64,000 nt of DNA from Blepharisma stoltei ATCC 30299. Taxonomy: Eukaryota > Protista > Ciliophora. The stretch is taken from the NCBI GenBank assembly GCA_965603825.1, contig CBFDEM010000020.1:806001-870000 (forward strand), read 5' to 3'. Below the pieces are notes generated by a model. The model saw only the letters and a list, made by a program, of their open reading frames with translations, was not told the origin of the DNA and did not search any database. Position numbers and translations under genes: made by a program. Of the stretch, positions 2,958 to 58,200 are shown piece after piece; the stretch's first letter is position 1; each line of letters begins with the position of its first letter.

Positions 2958-3983
2958 TTAGCATTTTAAATCTGAATAGAAATTACCCTCAAACACCTTG
3001 GCTTTGGCCATACCTATTTCCATTTCAATACTTTCAATTTCAGTTTGTCTTTCTATCTTAGCAAGGCTGAGCCTTTGTCTTTTCTTTTTAATATTGCATA
3101 TTTTGCGGTTAACGTTCTCTATTTTCGGCTTAAGATCCTGATTAGAAAATACAGAAATCTTCCCTCTGTAAAAATCAATCAAATTTGAAGTTACGATATG
3201 GTCTTTTATCCAAGTTTCTGATTTTTCTAAATTCTTTTCTAATACTTCTACGACTGAAAATTTCTTTTTTAATTGGCTTTTTATATTTTCTTTTGCGATC
3301 TTTTTCTTATTAGAAACTTCTTTAAACAATTCTCCTCTTTTTTCAGCAAATCTAATTTTAGCTTCTATAATTAATTTTTCTTTTTCAGAAATATTTTTTT
3401 TACAGTTTGAGACTAATTCCTTAAGGTTGCTAATGCCTGTAAGCTCACGAACGTTTTTATTTACCAATTTAACTATCTCTTGAGAAACCAATTCATCATC
3501 ATTCGATATAGTGCTTCCTTGGTCTTCTGTGATTTCAATATTAGTAGGAGTTTGGCTAAGAGTTTCTTGAGATTCATTGCTCGATCGATTTTCAGCTTTA
3601 ATTTTAAGGTATTTTTCCTCTAGCCTTTCCAATTTTTTTCCTTTTTCCGCAATCTCTAAAGTGGTTTGTTCAATTGTTTTTTGTAGCTTTTCTATCTGTA
3701 ATATGTATATCTTGCAAAGTTGGTCTTTTTCATTATATTCTTCTAATAAAAGCCTTGCTTTTTCAGAGTAAGAAGCTGTGCCAAGCCTACTGTCAATTTC
3801 TTGGATTTCTAAATCAAAATTATTTATTTTGTTAGTTAAAGCTTGTTCACTATCTATCAATTTATTATATTCTGCTCTTTTTTCTTCGATTTTATGCTCA
3901 ATAACGCTTAAATTATTAGCTAGTTCTTGAGAAAATTTATCCTGTTCCTCGCTTAAAGATGAGTCTGCATTCATATCTTCCAT
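2958..3983 (-). CDS. Hypothetical coiled-coil protein (341 aa)
   Basis: Long E/K/L-rich ORF with aaaaATG start and TAA stop; no recognisable motif. Confidence 0.75.
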   Translation of the reverse strand: MEDMNADSSLSEEQDKFSQELANNLSVIEHKIEEKRAEYNKLIDSEQALTNKINNFDLEIQEIDSRLGTASYSEKARLLLEEYNEKDQLCKIYILQIEKLQKTIEQTTLEIAEKGKKLERLEEKYLKIKAENRSSNESQETLSQTPTNIEITEDQGSTISNDDELVSQEIVKLVNKNVRELTGISNLKELVSNCKKNISEKEKLIIEAKIRFAEKRGELFKEVSNKKKIAKENIKSQLKKKFSVVEVLEKNLEKSETWIKDHIVTSNLIDFYRGKISVFSNQDLKPKIENVNRKICNIKKKRQRLSLAKIERQTEIESIEMEIGMAKAKVFEGNFYSDLKC

Positions 3984-5200
3984 TTTTATAGTCAGTGTTT
4001 TGAGATAATCAATACTCTTTGGCTACTCTAAAGACAGAGATTGAATTATTTTCAGAGATTTTAGATTTGATTTTTAAAAAAATTATTTAAAATTAAATTA
4101 TTTATTTTAATTATTATATTGTTAAAAGCTTTTCAGTTATTGGATACAAGATTATGAATTTTCGGGAATCACCATGACGCTTTCAACAAAGAAAAAGGGT
4201 GAATTAATAAAATTTCCATTTTTACAATTAATAGAAACATCATATTTGTAATTCTTTCAGTTACCTATTAACTTAAAAAAAATTGAGCTTAATAATTATC
4301 TTAATTTCTATTATTTTACTAACAATTTTGACTTTATATAAATGCAATCTGATCAATTTCAATTATTATAAATAATGGCATCGATTTCTCTGTTCGCCAA
4401 ATAGAAATTCATTTCTTGAAATTGTGCCAAGTCAGGAATTTTAGTGAACTTAATTCCTCATATCCAGGCTGGAAGACTGGTGAAAGATCCTATCAGGCTA
4501 AGTTCAAAGAAACCACTGTTGAAGCCAATCTATGTATACTTAAGTGGCCAAAGTCATGGAAGCCACATCTTTCAGGGCTGAGGAATATACATTAATGCCC
4601 ATTATTGTGTTGTAAATAGTTAAGGTTCGCTTTAAACTATTCAAGTGAGATAAGATAATTTTCAATTAAAATGCAACTTAAAACACACAAATAAATTTTG
4701 AATTTTTTATTTTGATATTTCAGTCATTAACTTATGCAAAGGAGTTTAAATACAAGTGGTTAATTTATGAAAACTTATCAATGCTATACAAAATTTTTTT
4801 TTAAGCAGTTTTATGACCCACTTTTAAATTAGATTTTAAAAAAAAACTGTTAACTTTCATCGATATAATATAAGCTTAAAGCGAAATATAGCATGCTAAG
4901 TACTTTTCATTCATTATTGTAATTAAAATATTTTAAAATTAGCATCCAAAATTTTAAGTCGCGTGCTAATTAAGCCTATATATTTTTAGCAAACTCTAAT
5001 CTCCCTAATGTTTATAGTTTAAATCCCGAGCCTCTCGGCTTTATTTTGATGAAGCACAAAGACCAATATGGAATATCGCATGAGTTTAATAGCGGAGAAA
5101 TATGAAATCACTAAACAGATTGTTCTAGACTTAATAATTTATAATGCTTCATCTTTGAAATACACCACTGATTTTTTAATCACATCTCAGTATAAATAAA

Positions 5201-8200
5201 ATGCAAAATAATACCGAAACGAACTGGAGAGAGTTCAAAGTTGATGGAAATTCAAGCATTAAGGATTCAATATTTCCTAAAAATTTGGCAAAATCAACAC
5301 GGTATACACTTCTGTCAATTCTCCCTAAGAACCTTTTTGAGCAATTTCAGCGTTCGTCTAATCTGTGGTTCCTTATCGTTTCTATTTTCCAATTAATACC
5401 TATAAACCTAAACCCAACTGATTCATGAAGCACTATTGCACCTCTTGCATTATTACTGTTTTTTACATTCATAAAAGATGCTCTCAATGATTTTCGTCGA
5501 TGAAAAGACGATCAAAAAATAAATTCAATGCTTTATAGCTGCTGAAACGGGGAGAGATTCGAAAAAATTAAATCAAAAGATTTACTAGTAGGAAATATTG
5601 TCCTATTGAGAGATGGAGAAATCGTACCAGCAGATATGGTTCTTTTATCGTCAGAAAGTGATAACCAAAATGCATATTTAGACATCACAAGTATCATAGG
5701 AAGCGCCAATTTTAAAGAAGTTAAAGGGATTTCCGAAATCCAGAGATTCCTAAACTCAGCTGAAGGTGATGCAATTTTAAAAAAATTTCAAGGTAGAGTC
5801 AAAATGGAGGAACCCAATAACGATTTTTCGAAATTTAAAGGAAGGATAAAACTGACTGGTTTCCCAAAAGCATTTGAAATAAATGCTGAGCAAGCTTTAT
5901 TTAGAGGTGGAAAACTAAGCGGAACTTCATGGGTAACTGGGCTGGTTGTTTATACTGGCCATGAAACTAAAACTCTTATGAATACCAAAAGGCCTGAAAA
6001 AAAGACAAGTCTGCTAGAAAAACGTATCAATAAATGAGTAGGGATAATACTGCTGGTTTTAATAGGACTGGTAATATTTTCTATTTGTACTTATTATTAT
6101 TTATCAGTCAGCAACTATTCTTCTGTTACTCTGCCAGAAGCATTTGTGAGTTTTATTCTTTTGTATAATAACATCATTCCTATTTCTCTGTTTGTAACAA
6201 TGGATCTTATAAGGATTCTTCAAGTTATGTGTATCCAGCGAAATATGAAGCACACTGTCCATTTTAAAACAGGAGATGTAAATGAGGATTTAGGGCAAAT
6301 TGAATATATTTTGCTAGATAAAAGTAGGACAATTACTGAAAATGATTATTATGTCCAGCTATGTATTATCGACTCTGATGTATATATAAGAAGTGATTCA
6401 CCTGATTCAAGTTTAGCTTCTGATGAGGATGGTCCATTATGCAAACAAGCAATAGGAAATAATATTCTGTCTACTGAGAGAGTAACTTTTAATACTCCTA
6501 AAGAGCACTCACTTACTTTTTGTAATTTAAGGCTGGAATTGCTGAATAATAATGATGAAAAAAAGCTCCAATTTGCTAAGTGTATGGCTTTATGCAATTC
6601 TGTGACACCGTCTAGGGATAAAATCATAGGGCCAACTGCTGATGAAAAAGCACTAGTGAATTTAGCTTCTGAACTTGGTGTAAATTTGGTAGTAAAAGCT
6701 CAGAAAGCTTGTCAAATTGATATAAATGGATGCCAGGAAACTTTTAATATATTGGGATCAAGGCCTTTTCAACCGATTTCTAAAAAGACCAGATTACTAG
6801 TAAAAGGAAAGCCTGAAGACCCAGCTATATTATATATAAAAGGATCATATGATACCATTATCCCGTTACTGGACGACGAAGAATTGCAAGCAAGTTTGCT
6901 TTATGAATCCAAAAAATTGAGCTCAGAAGGTATAAGACCTGTTTTATTAGCTTATAAAATCCTAACTGACTCACAAACAAAGGATTTTCTCACCAAACTA
7001 GAACTCGCAAAATATTCTCCTGTAAATATGAACCACAAATATGAAGCAGCCTACTCTGAATTTGAAAAGAACCCTACTTTCTTAGGAGTTGCCGGGATTC
7101 GAGATAAAGTTCTTCCTGAAACTCTTGAATGTGTAGAAGCCTTAAAAAAAGGTGGAATAAAGCTATGGCTTGTAAGCGGAGACTCAGAAGAATGCACCCT
7201 TGAAGCTGCCTATAGCACAAAGCTACTGACTTCTAGACTCCCACTAGTCCAAATCAAACAAGCTACCAGTGTTTATGGGGTCACCAAAATTCTACAGCGG
7301 GCAATTGGCACTCACATTTACCACGAATCCTCCAGAAACAGGTCTAAAACAATTGTATACCGCAAGCCTGAAGCTCCCAAAATCGTCAATGAAATTTTTG
7401 ATAACGACGCTGAGGCTCAAATCGCCGCCTCAGAAAGTATTGTAAGCGAATTCCTCGAAGAAGCCTCTATCATAAAAGACGAAATTCAAGCCAAAGGTGC
7501 TCATCTTGCCTACCAATCCCTTATGGCAATGAATAATTCTCGTTCTCTCTATGATGCTTTTCTTTCCCGGTCTTTTTCTCCCAAAACAGTCAGTTTTGCG
7601 ATTTCAATAGACCGAAAGTCTTTTGAGTTTGCGTTATCTGACGAAGACTCAAGAAAATTATTGGTTTGTTTACTAGTAGCTTCTAAATGTGCTTTATTTT
7701 CTGATATGCTGCCTAAAGATAAAAGTAACCTTGTAAAGCTTCTGAAAGAGAACTTATCGTTTAAGCCAACTGTGCTAGCAGTTGGGGAAGGAAATAGCAA
7801 TATTTCTATGATCCAAGAAGCTGATATAGGCATTGGAATTCAGGATAAAGAGCATAACCATGCTTCAAATTTTTGCGAAATTTCTATATGCCATTTTTCT
7901 GTTCTAAACGAACTGATTTTATTGCATGGATATAGGAATTATTCGAGGATGTCGAGAATTATATTACTGTTCTTTTATAAGAACTTTGTATTGATTGCTA
8001 TAACATTTGGGTATATTTTTATGAGTGACTACTCAGGAGCTACTATTTATAACTCTGGGTTATTGGTTGGGTATAATTTGCTATATACTACTTTTCCTTT
8101 GATTTCACTTGCTACGTTTGACGTAAATGTAGATAAACAGAGACTTTTGGAGACTCCACAGCTTTATATACAAGGTATTTTAAATAAGCTTTTTAGCTGG

Positions 8201-47268: not shown

Positions 47269-50200
47269 TTATTTCATTTGATTAATTCTCCATGCTACAA
47301 GTTTACCCTTCAGCCACATCTTCATTGCGATTCTTTGTGTTCTCAAGACTCTATTTAAAGCTTTTTTCTGCAACTTGAAAATTTTTAAATCCTGCTTTAA
47401 AATTTGAAAATAAGCGGATTTTGAAACATTTTTTGATTTAAAAAAATTGTCCAAGCAATTAAGCCCAGTTTGGATATTTTTTAAGGCAAGAAACATTGTC
47501 CCAGTTTTAGGTCGCCGTCTAGGGGATAAGTACATTTGAACCCTGCTGAAAAAGCTATTGAAATGCTTTTTCTTGATACTGAATGTAATAGATGTTAAAT
47601 GTCTGAGCCCACAACTGACATAGCTGAGTTTATATTTGGAGACCTTTAAGTAGCATTTTCATATAATTAATGACTTTTGTTTTTCATTTGATAAATAATT
47701 GGAAATTGCTTTCACAAATCTTGAAACTTTTTTATATTTTTCTGAATCAAATTGTTTCGATTTTCTATTCGCAATATGAAAACAGCTCATAGCAGATTTT
47801 ATTTGAGTTCTTATTAATGATTCCAAGATTTGTACATGGGCAATTGTTTTGAGGGAATCATAGTTTTTCTGCTTTATTGAAGAATGCCAATGAGTAAAGC
47901 ACACAGAAAGTCGATAATTTATATCTTTTGATATATTTTTCAGCAGAATTTCTAATTGTTTCGCTTTCTTTTTCTGCAAATTCGCAATAGCTGACAAAGT
48001 CTGAAAAGACTCAGAAATTTTCCTATGGTTTGTAGCTTTATAAGCAGAATTAATAGTTTTAAATAAAAATGCCAAAGAAACTTGGTAAGCTTTTGTTTTC
48101 TGGTAGCAGGATTTTAAGTGAGAAAAAGACTCATGAGTTTTAGAAAGCAGCTTGGCTTCAATTATATCAGTAAGCGATTTTAAATAGCTTTCAGTTTTTA
48201 ATGTATATATATGGGTTTCGCTTTTTCATGCCTGCTGCTTGTATTTCTCTTCAAATCGGGTTTGGATTGTAGAAATCTTTCATTGGTTAAATCTTTTATA
48301 AAGATATTTATTGGCTTGAGTTGTTAGCTTTTCTCGGATTCTCTGCACAAATGCAGCATGTTTATATATAATTTTGAAAGAAATTGACAATTTTTTGGAA
48401 AAAATATTTGAAAGCTTTTTAGTTGCCTTGTCTAGCAAATTAAATACGAACATTTTCATTGTGTGCCTTTTGTATATCATAAAGCTCTTTTTGACAAGTC
48501 TCCGGTTAATAAAAAATGTTAAAAGCTTCAAGCCTCGTTTTTCTGCGGACTCAGCATATCCTCTTCTTTTCAGTCTCTTTGATTTTTCTATATCAATATA
48601 GCTGGCAGCTTTTTTAATCAAATCGCTTTCAGAGTCTGAATTTTTATAGCTTAAATGGATTGTTTGTGCTAAATTGTCTTCTTTGAAACTACTTATTTTA
48701 AATGGACTCTTTTTGGCTGAATTTTCTCGTGATGGCTTTTTGCTGCTTTTTAATCGTTCCCCATCAGAATTATTGCTGGATGAAATCAATAAAGACTCAT
48801 AGCTCGATGCGTTCCCTGAGGACTGTTTCGAAGGAGTTTTGCTGCGGGATGGGTCTTTTTCTTTTACATTATGGGCTTTTGGCACATGCAATGGTGGCTT
48901 TAAGTGGTTTTGGCTTTGTGAAAGTGGGAGACTTTTTGCAAAAGAACTATTAGCAGAGCTTCGTTTAGAGTCAGCGCGCTCAGTCTTGTCTAAAGTTTCA
49001 TAGCTAAACTGAGCCACAATTCGTGATGAAGTGTTTGCATACTGTTTTTGCTCATTGTCTACAACTTTTCTAATACTTTGACTATGATCTCTTGATGATG
49101 AACTTTTGCTTGAACCTTGGGTGTCTAAAATAGCTTTCCTATCTTTTTTTTTATAATATAAGCTTTCTACTACATCTTTATGGTCAGTTCCTTGGGTCCT
49201 TTCAGTTTGTTGGTCTATGTATTGTTGGAGTGTTCTAGCTGTGTGCTCTTCACTATGATCTAAATAGTCTTGAACTAGAATGGGGTCTGTGTCTTCTAAA
49301 GAAGAAAAAAAATTTGAAGCATGGTTTCTTTTGGAATTTTCATGAGCTGACCTACTGTGATTTGAAATTGAAAAATCTGGAGACTCGTGGTGATTTTTCA
49401 TCCCGAATTCCCCTGTAATTCTTCTTCTGTTATGCTCTCCTGAAGAAAAATCTTCTATACTTCTTCTGTGGATTCTTTTGGTTTTTTTCCCATCTTGCTC
49501 TTCAAGACTTGTTTGTATTGCTTCGCTTTTTTTAAGACTTTTCATAAGAAAATTAATAGAATTTGTCTCTTTCATAGCTTTGAATACTACTTTTAAGGTA
49601 TTTTTGTACATTTTTTCAGTGTAGCATAACAGGGTTTTTGTGACTAAATCTTTCCTATAAGCAATTTTTATGATTTCTATAGAATCCCTCTTTGCTTTTT
49701 TTGCTGCTTTATTTAAAACTCATATAATTTTGACATAGCCTTCTGTCCTATTAAACACGTTTAATTCTTTAGAAATAGGTGATAAATCGATTGATTTTCT
49801 TTCTGTAACTGGGCTAGATATTTCTGCCTCATTAACCTTTCTCACCTCTATAACAGATTTTTTCTCTCCATAATTTTGCAAATTCCTGGGCATCTCCTGA
49901 TTGTTTTCTGGCAAAACCCTCAAGCTTGCATTTGCTGAAAACACTTTTCGGTATTTTCTCCCATCAATACTATTAGCATCAAACCATACTGGCATAGTTG
50001 TATCTTTAAAGCTGATTTCTTCAGGTTTTTCATTAATACTTGTTCGGCTGCTAGAAATTCTTTTGGAGTTAAGAATCAATTCAGTCCTTTTGGAGGCTTC
50101 TTTTTTTCATATTCACAGATGTTTACATATAAACCTTTTAATGCAAGAAAAAATTAATTGGGCTGCATCTAGTTTATATGTCCGCAATTTTTCTTTAGGA

Positions 50201-51142: not shown

Positions 51143-51703
51143 ATGACCTTAATTTCTTACATAAAAATATTTCTGACATTACTTAAAATGAAAAATACAT
51201 TGCCACTCCCAGCTCCAAAAGAAATCCTTTGCAGCCAGAACCCCGAGTCTGAATTCAAATGCTCATACTGTAATACTTCATTTCTTACTTCAGATGATTT
51301 ATTGCATCACAATTCAGTTTATGAATATTCAGTTACTAGTATACCCACTGGAATTGAGACCCCAATTCCAGTGAAAATATTTTCAAACGTTGAAAAACCG
51401 ACTTTAATTACTGGAAGTGAAATTAAAGCAATTGAATGCCATGAATGCCTTAGACTTTTTTCTTCAGAAAAAGGCCTAAATCAGCATGTGGGCAAAGTCC
51501 ACAATTTCAATCGAAGATCAGTAAAATGCCATTTATGCATCAAAAAATTTAGAGAGGGCTCAGCATTGAAATTTCATATAAGGCAGGTGCATGATAAAAC
51601 TACAAGAGTCAAGTGTGATGATTGCCAAAAGGTGTTTTACAGTAAATATGTGCTTTTAAAGCATAGGAATAAGTGCCTTATGAAGATGAGATCCGAAATT
51701 TAA
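51143..51703 (+). CDS. C2H2 zinc-finger protein
   Basis: CSYC..F..L..H, CHEC..F..L.QHVGKVH, CHLC..F..L.FHIRQVH, CDDC..F..L..H...C. The true start may be ATG 51188. Confidence 0.85.
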   Translation: MTLISYIKIFLTLLKMKNTLPLPAPKEILCSQNPESEFKCSYCNTSFLTSDDLLHHNSVYEYSVTSIPTGIETPIPVKIFSNVEKPTLITGSEIKAIECHECLRLFSSEKGLNQHVGKVHNFNRRSVKCHLCIKKFREGSALKFHIRQVHDKTTRVKCDDCQKVFYSKYVLLKHRNKCLMKMRSEI

Positions 51704-51939
51704 ATAATTAATGAGTTAAAAAGCCAAAATATAATTTTCTTTAATTATTGAGAGGATAATTTTTATGATTTTGCTTTGGTGGTATAAAGAATAATTTCTA
51801 GAAATGATAAATTTACAAGGTAAAAATTATGATTAAGCAGGGTAATAATTTTAATTAAAATTTTGCTTTAAAAATAAAATCTTTCATTTTTCGTATATAA
51901 TTTATTAATACAGCTTTAAAATATATCATTATAAAATAA

Positions 51940-54120
51940 ATGGCAGATATAAGAGACTTTTCTATAAGCCCATCTTCATTGTCTGAAATATTTAAAAATA
52001 GAGACTCTAAAATCCAAAACTCATTAGAAAGTCTTAAAGCTTATGGTGGGATTGAAGGTCTTTGCCATCAATTGCAGACTGATTTATGCAATGGGATTGA
52101 CGACAGTCCTACAAAGATTTCTAAAAGAGTTAATCATTTTGGAACTAATAAATTTGAACCAAAAGTCCAGAGAGCATCATTTTTTGAGTGTTTAAAGGAC
52201 CAATTAACGGACTATACATTATTACTAATACTATTTCTTTCTTCAGTGTCCATTATTATTGGAGTCTTTGCAGGGACCACTGAATATATAGGAAATTTTA
52301 AAGTTCTGGTTTCGGTCTGAATTTTAAATGCGATTTATGCAGTTTTCAACTATAAAAAAGCAAAAAATTTAAGTACTTTGAAGGCACCGAATTGGAAAGT
52401 AAAGGTTATAAGAGCTGGGGTAGAAAAAGAGATTTCGAAAAATGACTTATTGACTGGGGATCTATTAATAGTATCTAAAGGAGACGTTTTGCAGGTAGAT
52501 GGAATTCTTATAAAAGGGTCAATTCTAGACATAAAAGAAAGAGAAAATCTTCATTTATCGAATGAAATTTCTCCTTTAGAGTCTAAAAATCCCTCAAATC
52601 CATTTATATATTTTAATTCAAAAATCCTTGAAGGCAATGGAGTGGTGCTTGTTTGTGCTGTAGGAAAATACACAAGCAAGCCACAAAGTATTCCAGAGCC
52701 AAGTGACGAAGAAGAGACTTTAATTGAGACTAAAATTGAAGAAAAAGCAGAATCTTGGGGAAAAATCGGGCTTATTTCATCAATAATTATTATTTTTGTG
52801 CTTCTCATTATATTCTTTTATCATTCAATTGTTGCCTGAAAATGGGGAGCTGCAGGAACAATTGAGGTGCTGTCTATTTTTGTAACAGGATTAGCCCTTA
52901 TTATTGTTTCGATTCCAGAAAATTTTACTGTTTTCGTCAGTACATATTTTTGCCATACTACTAAACAAATTGAAAAAGACAATATTTTCATTAAAAATGT
53001 TAGCCAAATTGAACTTATTGGAGAGGTTACAACTGTGATTATAAGCAGTAACAAGGAAAGCGCAAAAAGTTTATGCAATTTAATGCAAAATTTTGAAAAT
53101 TCAGGAATTGCAGTCATAATTGTTACTGAAGAAGATGTGAAAACAGGGAAAGAAATTTGTGAAAACTGTGGGATCACAGATGATTTTATAATGGACATAG
53201 AAATATTAAAAAAACGGGTCCCAGGGCTAATTAGTATTTTAGATTCAAACAAAGAAGACCCAAAAGTAGAATATATTATAAAATCATTCAAAAAGGCAGC
53301 AGAAAATGTCAAAGTCTTTGCGAATTGTGCACCAAATGATAAAATCATTATAAAACAAGCGTTGCAAGCTTCTGGAGAAGTCATAGCCTCTATAGAAGCA
53401 TGCCAAACTGATTCTTCATTATTAGAAATTTCCGATGTAGGGATTTTTACACCTTCAAACAGTCAAATTTGTATGGCTGCTTCCACTATTTTTTTGCCTG
53501 ACACCAACTATGAAGCCTTTATTCATTTTTTACGAAGAGGCCGAAATCTTGTGTTATCTACTCAAAAGCTTATAGTTCATCGAGAAGCGTCAATTTTTGT
53601 GTTGCTTTTTATCTGTTTAATTGGAGTTTTTACATCTGGAAAGCTGCTATTTAATGGCGTCCAATTGATTTGGATGTGTTTTTTGCTTGATATACTAGGA
53701 ACTTTAGTTTTTACGATTAATTATGATGGAGATAGTGAGACTAAGCCTTTTAAAAGGGAAGACGAAATTGTGAATGGAAATATGAAGATCTTGATAAGAG
53801 CTCAAATTCTTTATCAGGCCTTGGTACTTGTTTTTCTATATTTCGGAAGCCAAAGCTCATTAATTTTTCATACGTTTATTTTTTTGCAAATATTCAATGA
53901 ATTGAGTTTGGTGAATTGGAGCTTTAAGAATTTCAATGCAATTGCAGTAGTAGCATTAAGCTTTATAATGCATTATTTCGCTATAGAATATGCTGGAAGC
54001 TGGCTAGACTGTGAAAAAATGAGCTGGGAGGGCCATTTTAATTGCATTAAGCTTGCAGCTGGCTCTCTGGCAGCATTATTCATAGCAAAATTACTATTTA
54101 AGTTTGGCGAAAAGAAATAA
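51940..54120 (+). CDS. Degenerate, internally deleted PMCA (P2B Ca2+-ATPase)-like membrane protein (726 aa)
   Basis: Three in-frame ORFs joined by TGA at 52318 and 52837. PMCA-like YGGIEGLCHQLQTD..GI, RVNHFGTN, VIRAG, LLTGDL..GD.LQVDG, IIVSIPE, FANCAPNDK, VQLIWM, FHTFIFLQIFNEL. No DKTGT. Confidence 0.85.
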
Positions 54121-54238
54121 AAACAATAAAACTTAAAATTTCATACAAATAGCGAGCTATTTATAAGCGAAAATCATTAAAAAATTTTTTATTAGCACAA
54201 ATCCTCTTAAGTATATTATTAAATTTCTGTGCCAAAAA

Positions 54239-55249
54239 ATGAATCGAAAGATCATTTTAGTCCAAAGACCCCAAGGACTTCCTAAAGATGAAGACTTCAA
54301 GCTCATTGAAGAACCCCTTAACACAGCTTTAGAAATTGGAGAAGTTCTTGTCAAAGTAGAATGGATTTCTATCGACCCTGCCCAAAGAGTCTGAATAGGC
54401 GCCGGAAGATCATATATAACCCCTGTAAGTGTCGGATCTGTCGTCAAAGGAATGGGCGCTGGCATTGTAGTTTTTTCTAAAAGCCCTGCATTTAAGCGTG
54501 GCTCCTTTGTCACAGGGTTTTTACACTGGCAGGAATACGCAAAAGTCAAAGCGTCTGACATAATTCGTCTTCCTTCATATGTAAATCCACAGCTTCACTT
54601 AGGGGTTTTAGGTATGACAGGACTGACTGCTTATGTAGCTGTAAATGAAATAGCGAAACCAAGAAAAAAAGAAACCATGGTTGTCTCCACAGCCGCAGGC
54701 GCAGTCGGGTCTATAGCCTGCCAATTGGGAAAAATCCGAGGTTGCCGCGTTATCGGTATTTCTGGCTCTGACGCCAAAAATAGGTGGCTTACAGAAATAG
54801 GTGTCGACGGTGTTATTAACTACAAAACAGTGCCAAACCTGACACAAGCCTTAAAAAGCCTCTGCCCTGAAGGTATCGACATTTACATTGACCTTGTCGG
54901 TGGCGATATCCTGGACGCAGTCTTACTAAATATCAAAAAATACGCAAGGATCGTCATGTGTGGGGCCATTTCTTCTTATAACCTCAAAAGAGCCCCGCCA
55001 ATCCGTTATTACCCTCTCATAATCTCCCAATCAGCCTCAGTTGAAGGATTTATTGTATGGGAACACAGAAATAAATTCGACATTGCCGTAAAAAATCTGA
55101 GTAAATGGATAAAAGAAAACAAAATAAAGCACAAAGAGCACATCGTGGACGGCATTGAAAACGCCCCAAGAGCATTAAGAATGGTCATGACTGGCGAAAA
55201 TTTCGGAAAAATGGTGGTAAGAGTGGAACATCAGAGTCCTAAAATTTAA
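54239..55249 (+). CDS. NADP-dependent alkenal/prostaglandin reductase-like MDR oxidoreductase (336 aa)
   Basis: ATG 54239; TGA=Trp at 54392 in SIDPAQRVWIG; LGVLGMTGLTAY, VSTAAGAVGS, CGAISSYN, GENFGKMVV. Confidence 0.92.
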
Positions 55250-55256
55250 CAATTAA

Positions 55257-58200
55257 TTATTGAGTTTCACAATTTTGTGAGTAATCAGAATCACGCTGCT
55301 TCAGCTCTTTTCGGTCCTTTCGGCTGTTTTTTAGCTCGCTCGGGAGGAAGCCTTTTTTCTTTTCACCACGCTTGCGAGGCATGATGTCAATTGGGGACAT
55401 TTCTTGGAGTTTTTTGAACTTTTGCAGCTCTGATTTGAGGTCGGAGTTTTCGTCTTCGAGGAGACGTAAGGATTTTTCTAGTTCTCGCTTTTGCTTGGTG
55501 AGGTTTCGGCTGCCTTGGAGAAGCATTTCGTTGTCAATTTTGATGCTTTCATAGCTTTTCTTGAATTTTGTTAAGTCCTCTTCTGAGCATTTTTGCTTGA
55601 ATTCAGCGTCTTGGATTTTCTTGTGAAGATCATGCCTTTCAGACTCAAAGATTGACTTTACCATGTTTTCATCAATCAAGTCACTTTGGAGTCTTTTATA
55701 AGAATTCCTCCTCTTTAAGTTTGTGATTTCTTCTTCACTTTTAGAGATTATTTTTTCTTTTTTTGAAAGCAAATTTGATAAATCAGAGTTTTCTTTTTCT
55801 AGCTGCTCAAGGGTGTCTTGGAGCTTCTTTTTGTCATCTTTTATGTCTTTTAAGGCCTTTTCGTGCTCTTGTACTTTTTCTTTCCATTGCTCTACCTGGT
55901 CTTTAAGCTCAAAAATCCTTTCTTTATTTTTCTCATTACTTCTATTAATAGCTGCCTGCTGATTCTGATAAAATTCTTCTTTGAGCTTTGAGTATTCTAT
56001 ATCCTTCTGTATCAATGCTTGGTTCAATGATGAATTTTCTTGCAAATATTTGTCTAGCGTTGCCTGCAATTTATCATGGTCTTTATTTATATTATTTTTT
56101 TCTAATTCTTCTATTTTTGACACCAAGTTTGAGTTTTCTTCATTTGTCTGTTCATAAGCCAATTTTACTTCATTTAACTCTGTTTCACAGTATTCCAGCT
56201 TCTGTATAAGTTCTTCATTTTTTGTTTTTAAGCTTGACAATTCAGTGTCCAAACTGTCTTTTTCATTAGAGTTTTCTTGCAAAAAATCAGACAATTCATC
56301 AAGTCTTGACTGAGCAGTTGTATATAAAGCTTCATAATCTGCCATCCTGGCTTTAAATTCATTCATCTCATGCTCAAGTTTTTCTTTTTCATTTGTATTC
56401 TCTTGTAGATAATTGGAAAGCTCGTCAAGTTTTGATTGAGAAGCATTGTATAAAGCTTCAAGTTCTGATTTTTGGTCAATAAGAGATTGGCTGTCTGATT
56501 GGAGAGATTTTATTAGAACTGAAAATTCTTCAAGTTTTGATAGAGAAGAGTTGTATGAGATTTCTAGGTCAGAGGATTTTTTCATTAAAGACTGGCTTTC
56601 TGCTTGCGATAATGATAATAAGGTTGATAGCTCAGCTATTTTTGATTGGAAATTGGTGGAAATGGAGCTTAGCTCAGAGTTTTTGGAAAGAAGTGCATCA
56701 TTTTCTAGCTGAGTGGATTCTAAAAGACTAGTGATCTCTCCTATAAAGTTCAATTGCTCATTTAAATTATTTTGTGATTCTAATACTTTTTTATTTAATT
56801 CTTCTTTTTCTTTTTCAAAACCTTCTATAATCCCTTTATATTCCCTTATCGCATTTTCAATATTTTCATAATTTTTGAGCTTTTCTCTATCCTCATCACT
56901 TTTTTCTTTCATTATTTTCATCTCCTCTAGCATTTTTTCTAACTTTTTACAATTTTCTTCATTATTCTTTTTTTCTTCAAAAATTATTCCTTGGTACTCA
57001 TTAATTTCGCCACACAAAATTTCATTTTTATCTGCTTCAAATTTCAGCTGAGACTCCAAAGTTCTGACTGTCTCATTTAATGGCTTATCTTTGCTTTCAA
57101 TGTACTCATACAGAAATTTCAGCTCACTTTCTAATTTCTCTAAATCCTTAGCGTGCTCCTCAGTTAGATTTTTATTGACTTTTTCTAAATTTTCATATGA
57201 AGATACAGCAGCTAAACAAACTTCTTCATATTCCTTGACTTTAGCTTCCATTCCAAAGGTTCCTTCTATTTGTTTTTCTAGCTCGCTTATCTGGATTTCT
57301 TGCTCTCTCACAATTCTAGCTTGTTCCTCAAATTTATCTAGCAAAACTTTATTTCTTTCATTAAGGATTTCAATCTGAGTTTGCCTTTCAGTTTTTTCTA
57401 CTTCTTTCATATTCAAAATTTGAAGCAGCTCCTGATAGTCTCTTTCCAGCTTGCTTAGCATCAGCACATCATCCCTCCTTATAAACTCATCAATCTTTGC
57501 ATTCAAAAACCCTATATTTTCCCTCAGTCTATTATTTTCAGCCACTTTTTCTTCAATTTCTTTATTTTTCAGAATTTTCATTTCTTCAATTTGAAACATT
57601 AGCATTTCTTTTTCATTTTCCAAAGAATTTATTGAGTCTATATACTGCTGGACATCGATAGTATTTTCTACATGATTTTGGATTTGTTCATTTAAAAGCT
57701 CGCCTTCCATTATGATAATTTGGTATTTTTCTTCATAGTCATTTTTTATTTTTTCTATATCTTTTCTTAAACTTGCTATATTTTCGTCTCTTTCTATAAG
57801 CATGGTCTCTAAGGTCGCTATGTATTCTTTGTCTTCAATTGTTTGATTTTTCGTTTTTCGGCTCATAAACAAGCTTGATTGGATTCTGCTTCTTCTTTCT
57901 TCGTTAGAAGCTGGAGTATTAAAGCTTGCAGGGCTTGGCCTTTCTGAATGTACAATCCTATTTTGGATTTCTCTGAGCTGGTCTTCTTTTTGAATTAGCG
58001 CTTTTTTTAGATTTTCGTTATCATTTTCGACCTTTTCTAAAATTGCTGAGTGATATGTATCTTTTTCATTATTTTCTATTTTCAGCCTCGTCAGTTCATG
58101 GTTTTTGTCATTTAATGAGTCTTGCAACTCTTCTATTCTGCATTGCAGCTTTTTCATCTCGTCCTGCATATTTTTCAGCTGACTTTCTGAGCTGACCACT

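What the first reader, a model, noticed from the sequence alone, without database searches (positions are those of the whole stretch)
51940..54120. Intact 'mini-PMCA' pseudo-pump: phosphorylation motif and entire nucleotide-binding domain cleanly deleted
Seen: an uninterrupted 726-codon frame (TGA=Trp) that follows P2B Ca2+-ATPase order from the N-terminus through the C-terminal TM bundle. Canonical pumps read ...ETMGxATxICSDKTGTLT-[~250-aa N-domain]-DPxR...AGIxVRMVTGDN. This protein reads ELIGEVTTVIISSNKESAKSLCNLMQNFENSGIAVIIVTEEDVKT (~53011-53145), so the two halves of the P-domain are fused directly. TGES is absent, TGD becomes TEE, GDGTND becomes EACQTD, and PEGL becomes PENF with the M4 Glu kept. 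Known: these motifs are essential for the P-type cycle. Inference: this is not an ATP-driven pump, yet it is heavily diverged with no frameshift or TAA/TAG, which suggests a selected new role such as a passive leak or channel, ion or lipid sensor, or regulatory partner of real PMCAs.
Basis: partly seen in the sequence, partly recalled or inferred. Interest (0 to 1): 0.8.

Follow-up and report, generated by a model that had tools for sequence, protein, structure and literature searches.

The report
Calcium-pump relic lacking its ATP engine
The ciliate Blepharisma keeps and transcribes an intact gene for a calcium-pump relative that has lost its ATP-binding domain and every catalytic motif, so it cannot pump, yet selection has kept it open and foldable, which points to an unknown non-enzymatic membrane role.

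Summary
Window 51940-54120 (+) is one 726-codon frame (two in-frame TGA=Trp, stop TAA). It descends from the plasma-membrane Ca2+-ATPase (P2B) family.

What it has lost:
- About 210 residues are missing: the DKTGT phosphorylation loop and the whole N-domain.
- TGES, TGD and GDGxND are gone.

The deletion is real. Contigs of three studies and the germline (MAC+IES) assembly are collinear across the junction. The only germline insert in the gene is an 82-nt IES at codon 141.

RNA-like runs give a 2181-nt unspliced contig that covers just this gene.

The gene sits inside the genome's PMCA clade, on an end branch of 3.9-4.9 changes per site against about 0.3 for its sisters. It has no TAA/TAG, where 29-58 occur in the other frames. 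Its replacements are more conservative than simulated drift (z about 9). AlphaFold predicts ten membrane helices, an A-domain and a closed half P-domain (pLDDT 89.6).

No orthologue was found in any searched collection. Other dead PMCA copies occur sporadically elsewhere. One Calothrix ORF has lost the N-domain at the same place.

Verdict: a real, selected pseudo-pump. Its function is untested.

The parts
51940..54120 (+). Complete coding sequence of the mini-PMCA: 726 codons plus TAA, no intron. It equals database protein P0001.
   Evidence: the RNA-like contig is collinear with no gap or joint
52318..52320 (+). In-frame TGA read as Trp (residue 127)
52837..52839 (+). In-frame TGA read as Trp (residue 300)
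52042..52251 (+). Cation_ATPase_N region (residues 35-104), running into M1
   Evidence: Pfam PF00690, 37 bits
52362..52362 (.). Site where the germline (MAC+IES) assembly carries an 82-nt IES inside the gene (codon 141). The insert is full of stops, so it must be excised precisely.
52396..52821 (+). A-domain (E1-E2_ATPase, residues 153-294). The former TGES loop is now HLSNEISPLES.
   Evidence: Pfam PF00122, 42.6 bits; alignment; pLDDT below 50 for residues 203-216
52558..52572 (+). SNEIS in the place of the dephosphorylation motif TGES
52915..52926 (+). M4 motif PENF (canonical PEGL). Pro326 and Glu327 are kept, and the helix is predicted to be broken here as in real pumps.
53041..53076 (+). 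Junction ISSNKESAKSLC. It stands where the DKTGT loop, the about 200-residue N-domain and the return linker lie in canonical pumps.
   Evidence: AF2 strand 365-369, helix 372-387, strand 391-395; collinear in DNA, RNA-like and germline sequence
53056..53544 (+). Remaining C-terminal half of the P-domain (residues 373-535). TGD has become TEE and GDGxND has become EACQTD. Thr396, Asp467, Lys468 and Asp491 are kept.
53644..54096 (+). Cation_ATPase_C (M5/M6 to M10, residues 569-719). The M6 Asp584 is kept, the M6 Asn has become Cys580, and the M5 Asn has become Ile552.
   Evidence: Pfam PF00689, 48.2 bits
51952..54132 (+). Extent of the single 2181-nt contig of RNA-like run X8. X10 covers 51947-54149 in two contigs.
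   Evidence: table 8. The spacers 51730-51951 and 54133-54214 have no contig in X8, while the DNA run X1 covers them.

Best explanation
This is a genuine, germline-encoded and apparently transcribed gene of Blepharisma stoltei. It arose by duplication of a plasma-membrane-type (P2B) Ca2+-ATPase and became a pseudoenzyme.

Shown:
- It keeps the N-terminal/A-domain module, ten predicted membrane helices and the C-terminal half of the P-domain.
- It has lost the phosphorylated Asp loop, the entire nucleotide-binding domain, TGES, TGD and the first Asp of GDGxND.
- Its frame is intact where drift would have broken it many times over.
- Its residue replacements are conservative.

Follows from the established Post-Albers mechanism of P-type ATPases: it can neither bind ATP nor form the aspartyl-phosphate, so it cannot run the pump cycle.

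Inferred:
- The intact frame and conservative replacements mean selection still acts on a folded membrane protein. Constraint is much relaxed: only 41% of family-invariant residues are kept.
- The most likely way of working is as an ATP-independent membrane scaffold or regulator. It would use the retained pump surfaces (membrane bundle, A-domain, half P-domain) to bind lipids or partner proteins, possibly the active PMCAs. It would do this rather than transport ions itself.
- A passive cation path through the uncoupled membrane domain is the main alternative.
For: Descent:
- The best PDB sequence hits are ACA8 and PMCA1/2.
- It nests in a starred clade of this genome's PMCA paralogues, nearest L013/L014/L015, at 29-30% identity.

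Catalytic death:
- No Hydrolase or N-domain Pfam hit.
- ACA8 alignment skips residues 463-676.
- Motif states are read from the alignment.

Reality of the deletion:
- Contigs of X1 and X5 (DNA) and X8 and X10 (RNA-like), from three studies, cross the junction with 0 gaps and 0 other letters.
- The MAC+IES assembly GCA_914767885.1 is collinear from 52362 to 54222. Its only insert in the gene is the 82-nt IES at 52362.

Transcription: X8 and X10 contigs match gene bodies and vanish in the intergenic spacers.

Selection:
- 0 stops in frame, against 29-58 in the other frames (one reverse frame has 9) and 43.6 in shuffles.
- Drift simulated from the sister coding sequences to the same identity hits about 60 stop-creating mutations (minimum 34). 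It gives BLOSUM62 -0.78 at changed sites against -0.12 observed, z about 9-10.
- A true decaying copy in the same genome (L030) is already split into three or more frames at 75-89% identity.

Fold:
- AF2 pLDDT 89.6, pTM 0.87, with ten membrane helices and a closed junction.
- Foldseek best matches are PMCA E1 states, TMq 0.73-0.76.
- The ESM Atlas model, made without an alignment, has pTM 0.72 and TM 0.88-0.89 to Ca-ATPase clusters.
Against: - No orthologue exists in 5.8 billion (word search), 1.84 billion (exhaustive) or metagenome collections. There is therefore no dN/dS and no proof of conservation between species.
- The end branch (3.9-4.9 against about 0.3) is in the range expected for nearly neutral protein evolution.
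- 59% of family-invariant residues are changed.
- 'RNA' for X8 and X10 is the tool's guess plus my inference from where the contigs lie. Contigs give no expression level.
- There is no protein-level evidence.
- The AF2 confidence leans on an alignment of real pumps.
- The conservative-replacement test is somewhat favoured by the aligner's own scoring.
- Nothing here tests any binding partner or ion flux.
Confidence: 0.7

Rival explanations
1. Functionless duplicate on its way out. The copy lost the N-domain in one deletion, has drifted almost neutrally since, and is transcribed only because its promoter survives. The open frame is a leftover.
For: - The end branch is very long and 59% of family-invariant sites are lost.
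- It is a singleton without orthologues.
- Comparable lineage-specific dead PMCA copies occur elsewhere. One example is Paramecium sonneborni P0034, only 56-59% identical to the intact PMCAs of sibling species.
Against: - Reaching 30% identity by drift would create about 60 in-frame TAA/TAG (minimum 34 in 200 runs), and none is present. No indel breaks the frame.
- Replacements are much more conservative than drift.
- A real decaying paralogue in this genome is frame-broken at only 11-25% divergence.
- An intragenic IES is still excised precisely.
Confidence: 0.14
2. Passive ion pathway. Without the cytoplasmic engine that gates access, the retained membrane bundle lets Ca2+ or another cation leak down its gradient, so the protein acts as a leak or channel.
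For: - Ten membrane helices are predicted, with M4 unwound at Pro326-Glu327 as in pumps.
- Two of the three PMCA site-II side chains are kept: M4 Glu327 and M6 Asp584.
- There is a precedent. Truncated SERCA1 splice variants that cannot pump lower ER Ca2+ through increased leak (PMC2192035, found; abstract only read).
Against: - The M6 Asn has become Cys and the M5 Asn has become Ile. PEGL has become PENF.
- Keeping 2 of 3 site residues is no more than the 41% background retention allows.
- No open pore was examined in the model.
- No flux data exist.
Confidence: 0.15
3. Artefact. The gap comes from a collapsed assembly, an unannotated intron, or somatic removal of the N-domain coding segment as an IES, while a full-length gene exists in reality or in the germline.
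For: About 70% of Blepharisma IESs are intragenic (PMC9942856), and the germline copy of this gene does contain one IES.
Against: - DNA and RNA-like contigs of three studies cross 53041-53076 with no gap, joint or loose end.
- The MAC+IES assembly is collinear there. Its IES lies 680 nt upstream, at 52362.
- The other motifs (TGES, TGD, GDGxND) are also degenerate, which a local artefact cannot explain.
Confidence: 0.01

Closest known systems
Canonical plasma-membrane Ca2+-ATPases (P2B): the B. stoltei paralogues at G000:C12:29000-36500, C18:184000-191500 and C2:253000-260500, and the solved structures ACA8 (8qmp) and PMCA1/2 (6a69, 9gs*)
   Same: - Common descent.
- Same order of N-terminal module, M1-M2, A-domain, M3-M4, P-domain and M5-M10.
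- Predicted fold TMq 0.73-0.76 to PMCA E1 states.
   Different: - No DKTGT, N-domain, TGES, TGD or GDGxND.
- About 210 residues shorter in the headpiece.
- 29-30% identity where the sisters share 58-68%.
- Cannot be a pump.
Truncated SERCA1 splice variants (S1T), PMC2192035
   Same: Naturally occurring P2-type ATPase derivatives that cannot pump yet are expressed and change Ca2+ handling.
   Different: - S1T are C-terminally truncated splice products of an active gene, with few membrane helices.
- The gene here is separate and keeps all ten helices, and it lacks only the N-domain and the catalytic loop.
P4-ATPase-like domain of alveolate guanylyl cyclases (found: PMC7858053, PMC13466520; the state of their motifs is from my own knowledge)
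   Same: In the same broad lineage, which includes ciliates, a P-type ATPase body serves something other than plain ion pumping.
   Different: - P4 (flippase) type, not P2B.
- Fused to cyclase domains.
- The N-domain is present.
- At least PfGCalpha needs the activity of its ATPase domain (title of PMC7858053).
Calothrix sp. PCC 7103 657-aa P2-ATPase-like ORF (L151:1752-3725), and two ESM Atlas cyanobacterial clusters (61 and 55 members, 629-653 aa)
   Same: - Independent loss of the N-domain at the same structural position.
- It aligns collinearly with the mini-PMCA through the junction.
- SGKTG stands for SDKTG, TPE for TGD, GNGIDD for GDGxND.
- Same Pfam set, without a full Hydrolase hit.
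   Different: - Bacterial, and derived from a PacL-like pump.
- Much less diverged: Cation_ATPase_C 191 bits against 48.
- PEGL is intact.
- Not found in 300 other sampled cyanobacterial genomes.
- I could not retrieve or check the Atlas clusters.
Sporadic catalytically dead PMCA-like proteins in other eukaryotes (P0034 Paramecium sonneborni, P0015 Nematostella, P0118 Acytostelium, P0069 with 43 members from ENA; plant models P0121 and P0137 without an N-domain)
   Same: They lack DKTG, TGES and GDGxND but have full-length frames. Eleven such proteins occur among the 150 best hits.
   Different: - All but the two plant gene models keep at least part of the N-domain (P0060 only a part).
- None is an orthologue (at most 30% identity).
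- The plant models may be prediction artefacts or isoforms.

Membership tests
Functional P-type ATPase (catalytic membership) | Phosphorylated Asp in DKTGT | tested here: not met
   No Asp in residues 358-398. The loop is replaced by ISSNKESAKSLC.
Functional P-type ATPase (catalytic membership) | Nucleotide-binding N-domain inserted in the P-domain | tested here: not met
   No PF13246 or PF00702 hit. ACA8 residues 463-676 are skipped. AF2 shows strand-helix-strand closure.
Functional P-type ATPase (catalytic membership) | A-domain TGES dephosphorylation loop | tested here: not met
   SNEIS plus an insertion; pLDDT below 50 for residues 203-216.
Functional P-type ATPase (catalytic membership) | P-domain TGD and GDGxND Mg2+/phosphate motifs | tested here: not met
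   TEE and EACQTD. Only Thr396, Asp467/Lys468 and Asp491 are kept.
P2B (PMCA) family by descent | Sequence homology over the N, E1-E2 and C Pfam families, with best matches to PMCAs | tested here: met
   Pfam scores are above the cut-offs. ACA8 gives E 3e-24 and PMCA1/2 follow.
P2B (PMCA) family by descent | Phylogenetic position inside the PMCA clade | tested here: met
   It lies in a starred clade of 8 rows (100/99) and of 10 rows (100). Its exact place within the clade is unresolved because of the long branch.
P2B (PMCA) family by descent | Single Ca2+ site formed by M4 Glu, M6 Asn and M6 Asp | tested here: inconclusive
   Glu327 and Asp584 are kept and Asn has become Cys580. This is not distinguishable from background retention.
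P2B (PMCA) family by descent | Calmodulin-binding autoinhibitory tail | not tested
   The protein ends 6 residues after predicted M10. The nearest sisters also have short tails.
Pseudoenzyme (selected non-catalytic homologue) | Catalytic residues lost while the fold is kept | tested here: met
Pseudoenzyme (selected non-catalytic homologue) | Maintained by selection and expressed | tested here: inconclusive
   The intact frame, conservative replacements and RNA-like contigs support it. There is no orthologue for dN/dS and no protein evidence.
Ordinary pseudogene | Frame disruptions or lack of transcription | tested here: not met
   No stop or frameshift. A gene-sized RNA-like contig exists. Contrast the frame-broken copy L030.

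The most novel reading that the evidence does not exclude
A 'headless' P-type ATPase body works without ATP. The ten-helix bundle, A-domain and half P-domain would act as a gated or constitutive cation path, or as a regulator that pairs with active PMCAs to tune Ca2+ extrusion in a large excitable ciliate. The Calothrix ORF and the Atlas clusters would then mark the same solution arising independently in cyanobacteria, pointing to an unrecognised class of N-domain-less P2-ATPase derivatives.
Probability: 0.25. Interest if true: 0.8.

Novelty: new variant of a known kind. Interest (0 to 1): 0.55.

Why it matters
P-type ATPases are defined by their phosphorylation cycle. My searches of the open-access literature found no paper describing a family member that has cleanly lost the N-domain and the phosphorylation loop yet is kept by selection.

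If the protein is made and functional, it is a natural experiment on what the membrane, A-domain and P-domain core of a Ca2+ pump does when uncoupled from ATP. It could leak, sense or regulate. It would also add P2B pumps to the list of enzyme families that spawn pseudoenzymes.

The finding is limited by being a single-species singleton with no functional data.

Tried and rejected
Searches and tests that led nowhere:
- Orthologue search. The word search with residues 301-726 found only the protein itself. The exhaustive search with the whole protein gave a next-best hit of 29% identity. The metagenome scan found nothing.
- Assembly collapse, intron, or IES-mediated deletion. All are rejected by the contigs and by the MAC+IES assembly.
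- Segmental-duplication trace. Only the upstream zinc-finger-like gene has homologues, near the paralogues L020 and L022, and in a different orientation, so this is not informative.
- Other dead or short P2 copies in this genome. The low-scoring Cation_ATPase_C loci on C50 and C17 are, respectively, a canonical divergent pump and a frame-split gene that keeps TGES, TGD and GDGxND. The locus on C63 is a frame-broken recent copy. None resembles the mini-PMCA.
- A conserved cyanobacterial family. The Calothrix ORF is real but alone among about 300 sampled genomes. The Atlas clusters could not be retrieved.
- Paramecium P0034 as a conserved ciliate pseudo-pump. It is a species-specific fast copy, not a conserved family.
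- Literature on P-type pseudo-ATPases or N-domain-less pumps. Nothing was found.

Not done:
- The protein was never sent read through its TGA codons by reference. I used the three pieces or the database's own P0001.

Full report
**Source.** The window is G000:C20:806001-870000 of a 41.46-Mb assembly in 64 contigs. The same gene lies on GCA_914767885.1 contig CAJZBQ010000020.1. TGA codons of the paralogues fall on tryptophan columns. This matches the published code of Blepharisma stoltei, whose genome also has tiny 15-16-bp introns (PMC9942806). Earlier notes of this scan name the same organism. I take the organism to be B. stoltei.

**Observation.**
- Positions 51940-54120 (+) form one frame of 726 codons. 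It has in-frame TGA at 52318 and 52837 and ends with TAA. The protein database holds it as P0001, a cluster of one.
- The frame has no TAA or TAG. The other five frames have 9-58, and 1000 shuffles average 43.6 with a minimum of 27.
- Pfam finds Cation_ATPase_N, E1-E2_ATPase and Cation_ATPase_C, all above their cut-offs. It finds no Hydrolase or N-domain family.
- phmmer against PDB puts ACA8 and PMCA1/2 on top. It aligns ACA8 402-463 and then 676-1019, skipping about 210 residues.
PEGL has become PENF, TGES is gone, DKTGT and the N-domain are replaced by ISSNKESAKSLC, TGD has become TEE, and GDGxND has become EACQTD.

**Is the deletion real?**
- One DNA contig of 69 kb (X1, possibly the source of the assembly) spans the region. 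A DNA contig of another study (X5) spans 51903-54219. Both cross the junction without a difference.
- In runs X8 and X10 the contigs coincide with the three genes of the stretch and are absent from the two intergenic spacers. This is the pattern of RNA, although the tool marks 'RNA' as a guess.
- X8 gives a single 2181-nt contig, 51952-54132, with no gap and no joint. The transcript is therefore unspliced and lacks the N-domain segment too.
- The public record fetched turned out to be the germline-scaffolded MAC+IES assembly. It is collinear with the window except for inserts of 65-261 nt. These sizes fit the IES lengths published for Blepharisma, whose short class runs from about 65 to 115 bp (PMC9942856).
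- One 82-nt insert full of stops lies inside this gene at 52362 (codon 141). None lies at 53041-53076. The deletion is thus encoded in the germline and is not a product of somatic excision or of assembly.

**Descent and rate.**
- The genome holds about 27 loci with a Cation_ATPase_C match. I extracted sixteen full-length P2 pumps, all with DKTGT; the eleven nearest the mini-PMCA also keep the literal TGES.
- The mini-PMCA is 29-30% identical to its nearest paralogues L013, L014 and L015. These are 58-68% identical to one another.
- In a maximum-likelihood tree it lies inside a strongly supported PMCA clade. It groups weakly (84/84) with L013-L015, on an end branch of 3.9 changes per site against 0.25-0.30 for the sisters.
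- With outside homologues added, it stays in the starred 10-row clade, but its place inside is unresolved and the end branch is 4.9.
- Only 41% of family-invariant residues are kept, spread fairly evenly over the domains.

**Selection.** No orthologue exists in any collection searched, so dN/dS cannot be computed. I used three indirect tests.
- First, I simulated AT-biased drift from the sister coding sequences down to the observed identity. It produced about 60 stop-creating mutations, never fewer than 34 in 200 runs, and the gene has none.
- Second, at the changed positions the mean BLOSUM62 score is -0.12. The simulation, even with stops forbidden, gives -0.78 +/- 0.07, so z is about 9-10. 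The aligner's scoring favours the observed value somewhat, but not by this margin.
- Third, the genome offers a control. A copy beside the C63 tandem array is still 75-89% identical to its neighbour yet is already split into at least three frames.

I conclude that the frame and the general chemistry of the protein are under purifying selection, and that constraint on individual residues is strongly relaxed.

**Structure.**
- AlphaFold2 with a 101-sequence alignment gives pLDDT 89.6 and pTM 0.87. It predicts ten membrane helices with M4 broken at Pro326-Glu327. It also predicts a beta-rich A-domain whose former TGES loop is disordered, and a junction that reads strand 365-369, helix 372-387, strand 391-395. 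That is a Rossmann-like half P-domain closed without a cap.
- Foldseek ranks PMCA structures first, with TMq 0.73-0.76 for E1 states.
- The ESM Atlas model, made without an alignment, has pTM 0.72 and matches Ca-ATPase clusters at TM 0.88-0.89.
- These are predictions. The AF2 model borrows signal from real pumps.

**Mechanism.**
- By the established Post-Albers cycle, a P-type ATPase needs three things: ATP bound by the N-domain, phosphorylation of the DKTGT Asp, and TGES-assisted dephosphorylation. This step follows from the sequence.
- What it does instead is inference. I favour a non-enzymatic scaffold or regulator that uses the retained pump surfaces. A passive cation path is the main alternative. 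Truncated SERCA1 variants that cannot pump and increase ER Ca2+ leak give a precedent for that (PMC2192035).
- Keeping Glu327 and Asp584 does not discriminate between these readings. Two of three site residues is within the 41% background retention.

**Comparison and novelty.**
- Among the 150 best hits of the exhaustive search, eleven other proteins lack DKTG, TGES and GDGxND. They come from Paramecium sonneborni, Nematostella, Acytostelium, unnamed eukaryotes and plants. Only two plant gene models also lack the N-domain.
- The Paramecium protein is a species-specific fast copy, 56-59% identical to intact PMCAs of sibling species.
- The ESM Atlas feature search pointed to two cyanobacterial clusters with the same three-family architecture.
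- I found one concrete case, a 657-residue ORF in Calothrix sp. PCC 7103. It aligns collinearly with the mini-PMCA through the junction and has SGKTG, TPE and GNGIDD in place of the catalytic motifs. It has no counterpart in about 300 other sampled cyanobacterial genomes.
- Dead and even N-domain-less P2 pump derivatives therefore arise repeatedly. Literature searches found no description of them.
- I class the finding as a new variant of a known kind: a pseudoenzyme derived from a PMCA. It is interesting but is a single-species singleton without functional data.

**Limits.** There are no raw reads, so transcript ends, strand and level are unknown. There is no protein evidence and no orthologue. 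I did not lay run X12, which holds a third of the words and might be a diverged strain.

Noticed in passing
window 54217-54222 (intergenic, after the mini-PMCA stop): The MAC+IES assembly carries a 65-nt insert here, and the X5 contig carries about 68 extra letters at the same place. This is a short IES of the 65-bp class in a spacer.
   Followed up: partly
window about 49848-49852, 51450-51452, 54599-54601 and 55572-55573: Further germline-only inserts of 192, 209, 261 and 103 nt, seen by comparing L027 with the window. The 209-nt insert lies inside the upstream zinc-finger-like gene, and the 261-nt insert lies inside the downstream ADH-like gene.
   Followed up: partly
G000:C63:427900-430630 (L030, minus strand): A frame-broken copy of the neighbouring tandem PMCA-like genes. 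It is 75-89% identical to L024 but split into at least three frames, so it is a recent pseudogene.
   Followed up: partly
L151:1752-3725 (Calothrix sp. PCC 7103, G005:C7:7854251-7856224): A 657-aa P2-ATPase-like ORF without an N-domain and with SGKTG/TPE/GNGIDD in place of the catalytic motifs. It lies next to a SAM synthetase gene. It was not found in about 300 other sampled cyanobacteria.
   Followed up: partly
L021:1469-4375 (G000:C45:370000-377500): An otherwise canonical PMCA paralogue has a single in-frame TAA/TAG between two long ORFs (1469-2974 and 2978-4375). It may be a tiny intron or a fresh nonsense mutation.
   Followed up: no
L029 (G000:C17:134000-142500, minus strand): A divergent P-type ATPase-like gene is split over two frames (ORFs 3726-5507 and 5381-6118). 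TGES, TGD and GDGxND are present, but no DKTG was seen in the ORFs.
   Followed up: no
window 51437-51676: The upstream 186-aa zinc-finger-like gene has about 51% identical homologues next to the PMCA paralogues L020 and L022, in a different orientation.
   Followed up: no
proteins P0069 (43 members), P0148, P0073: Uncultured-eukaryote PMCA-like proteins of full length whose DKTG is DCTG, EKTG or GKAG and which lack TGES and GDGxND. P0069 recurs on many contigs, so it may be a conserved pseudo-pump.
   Followed up: no
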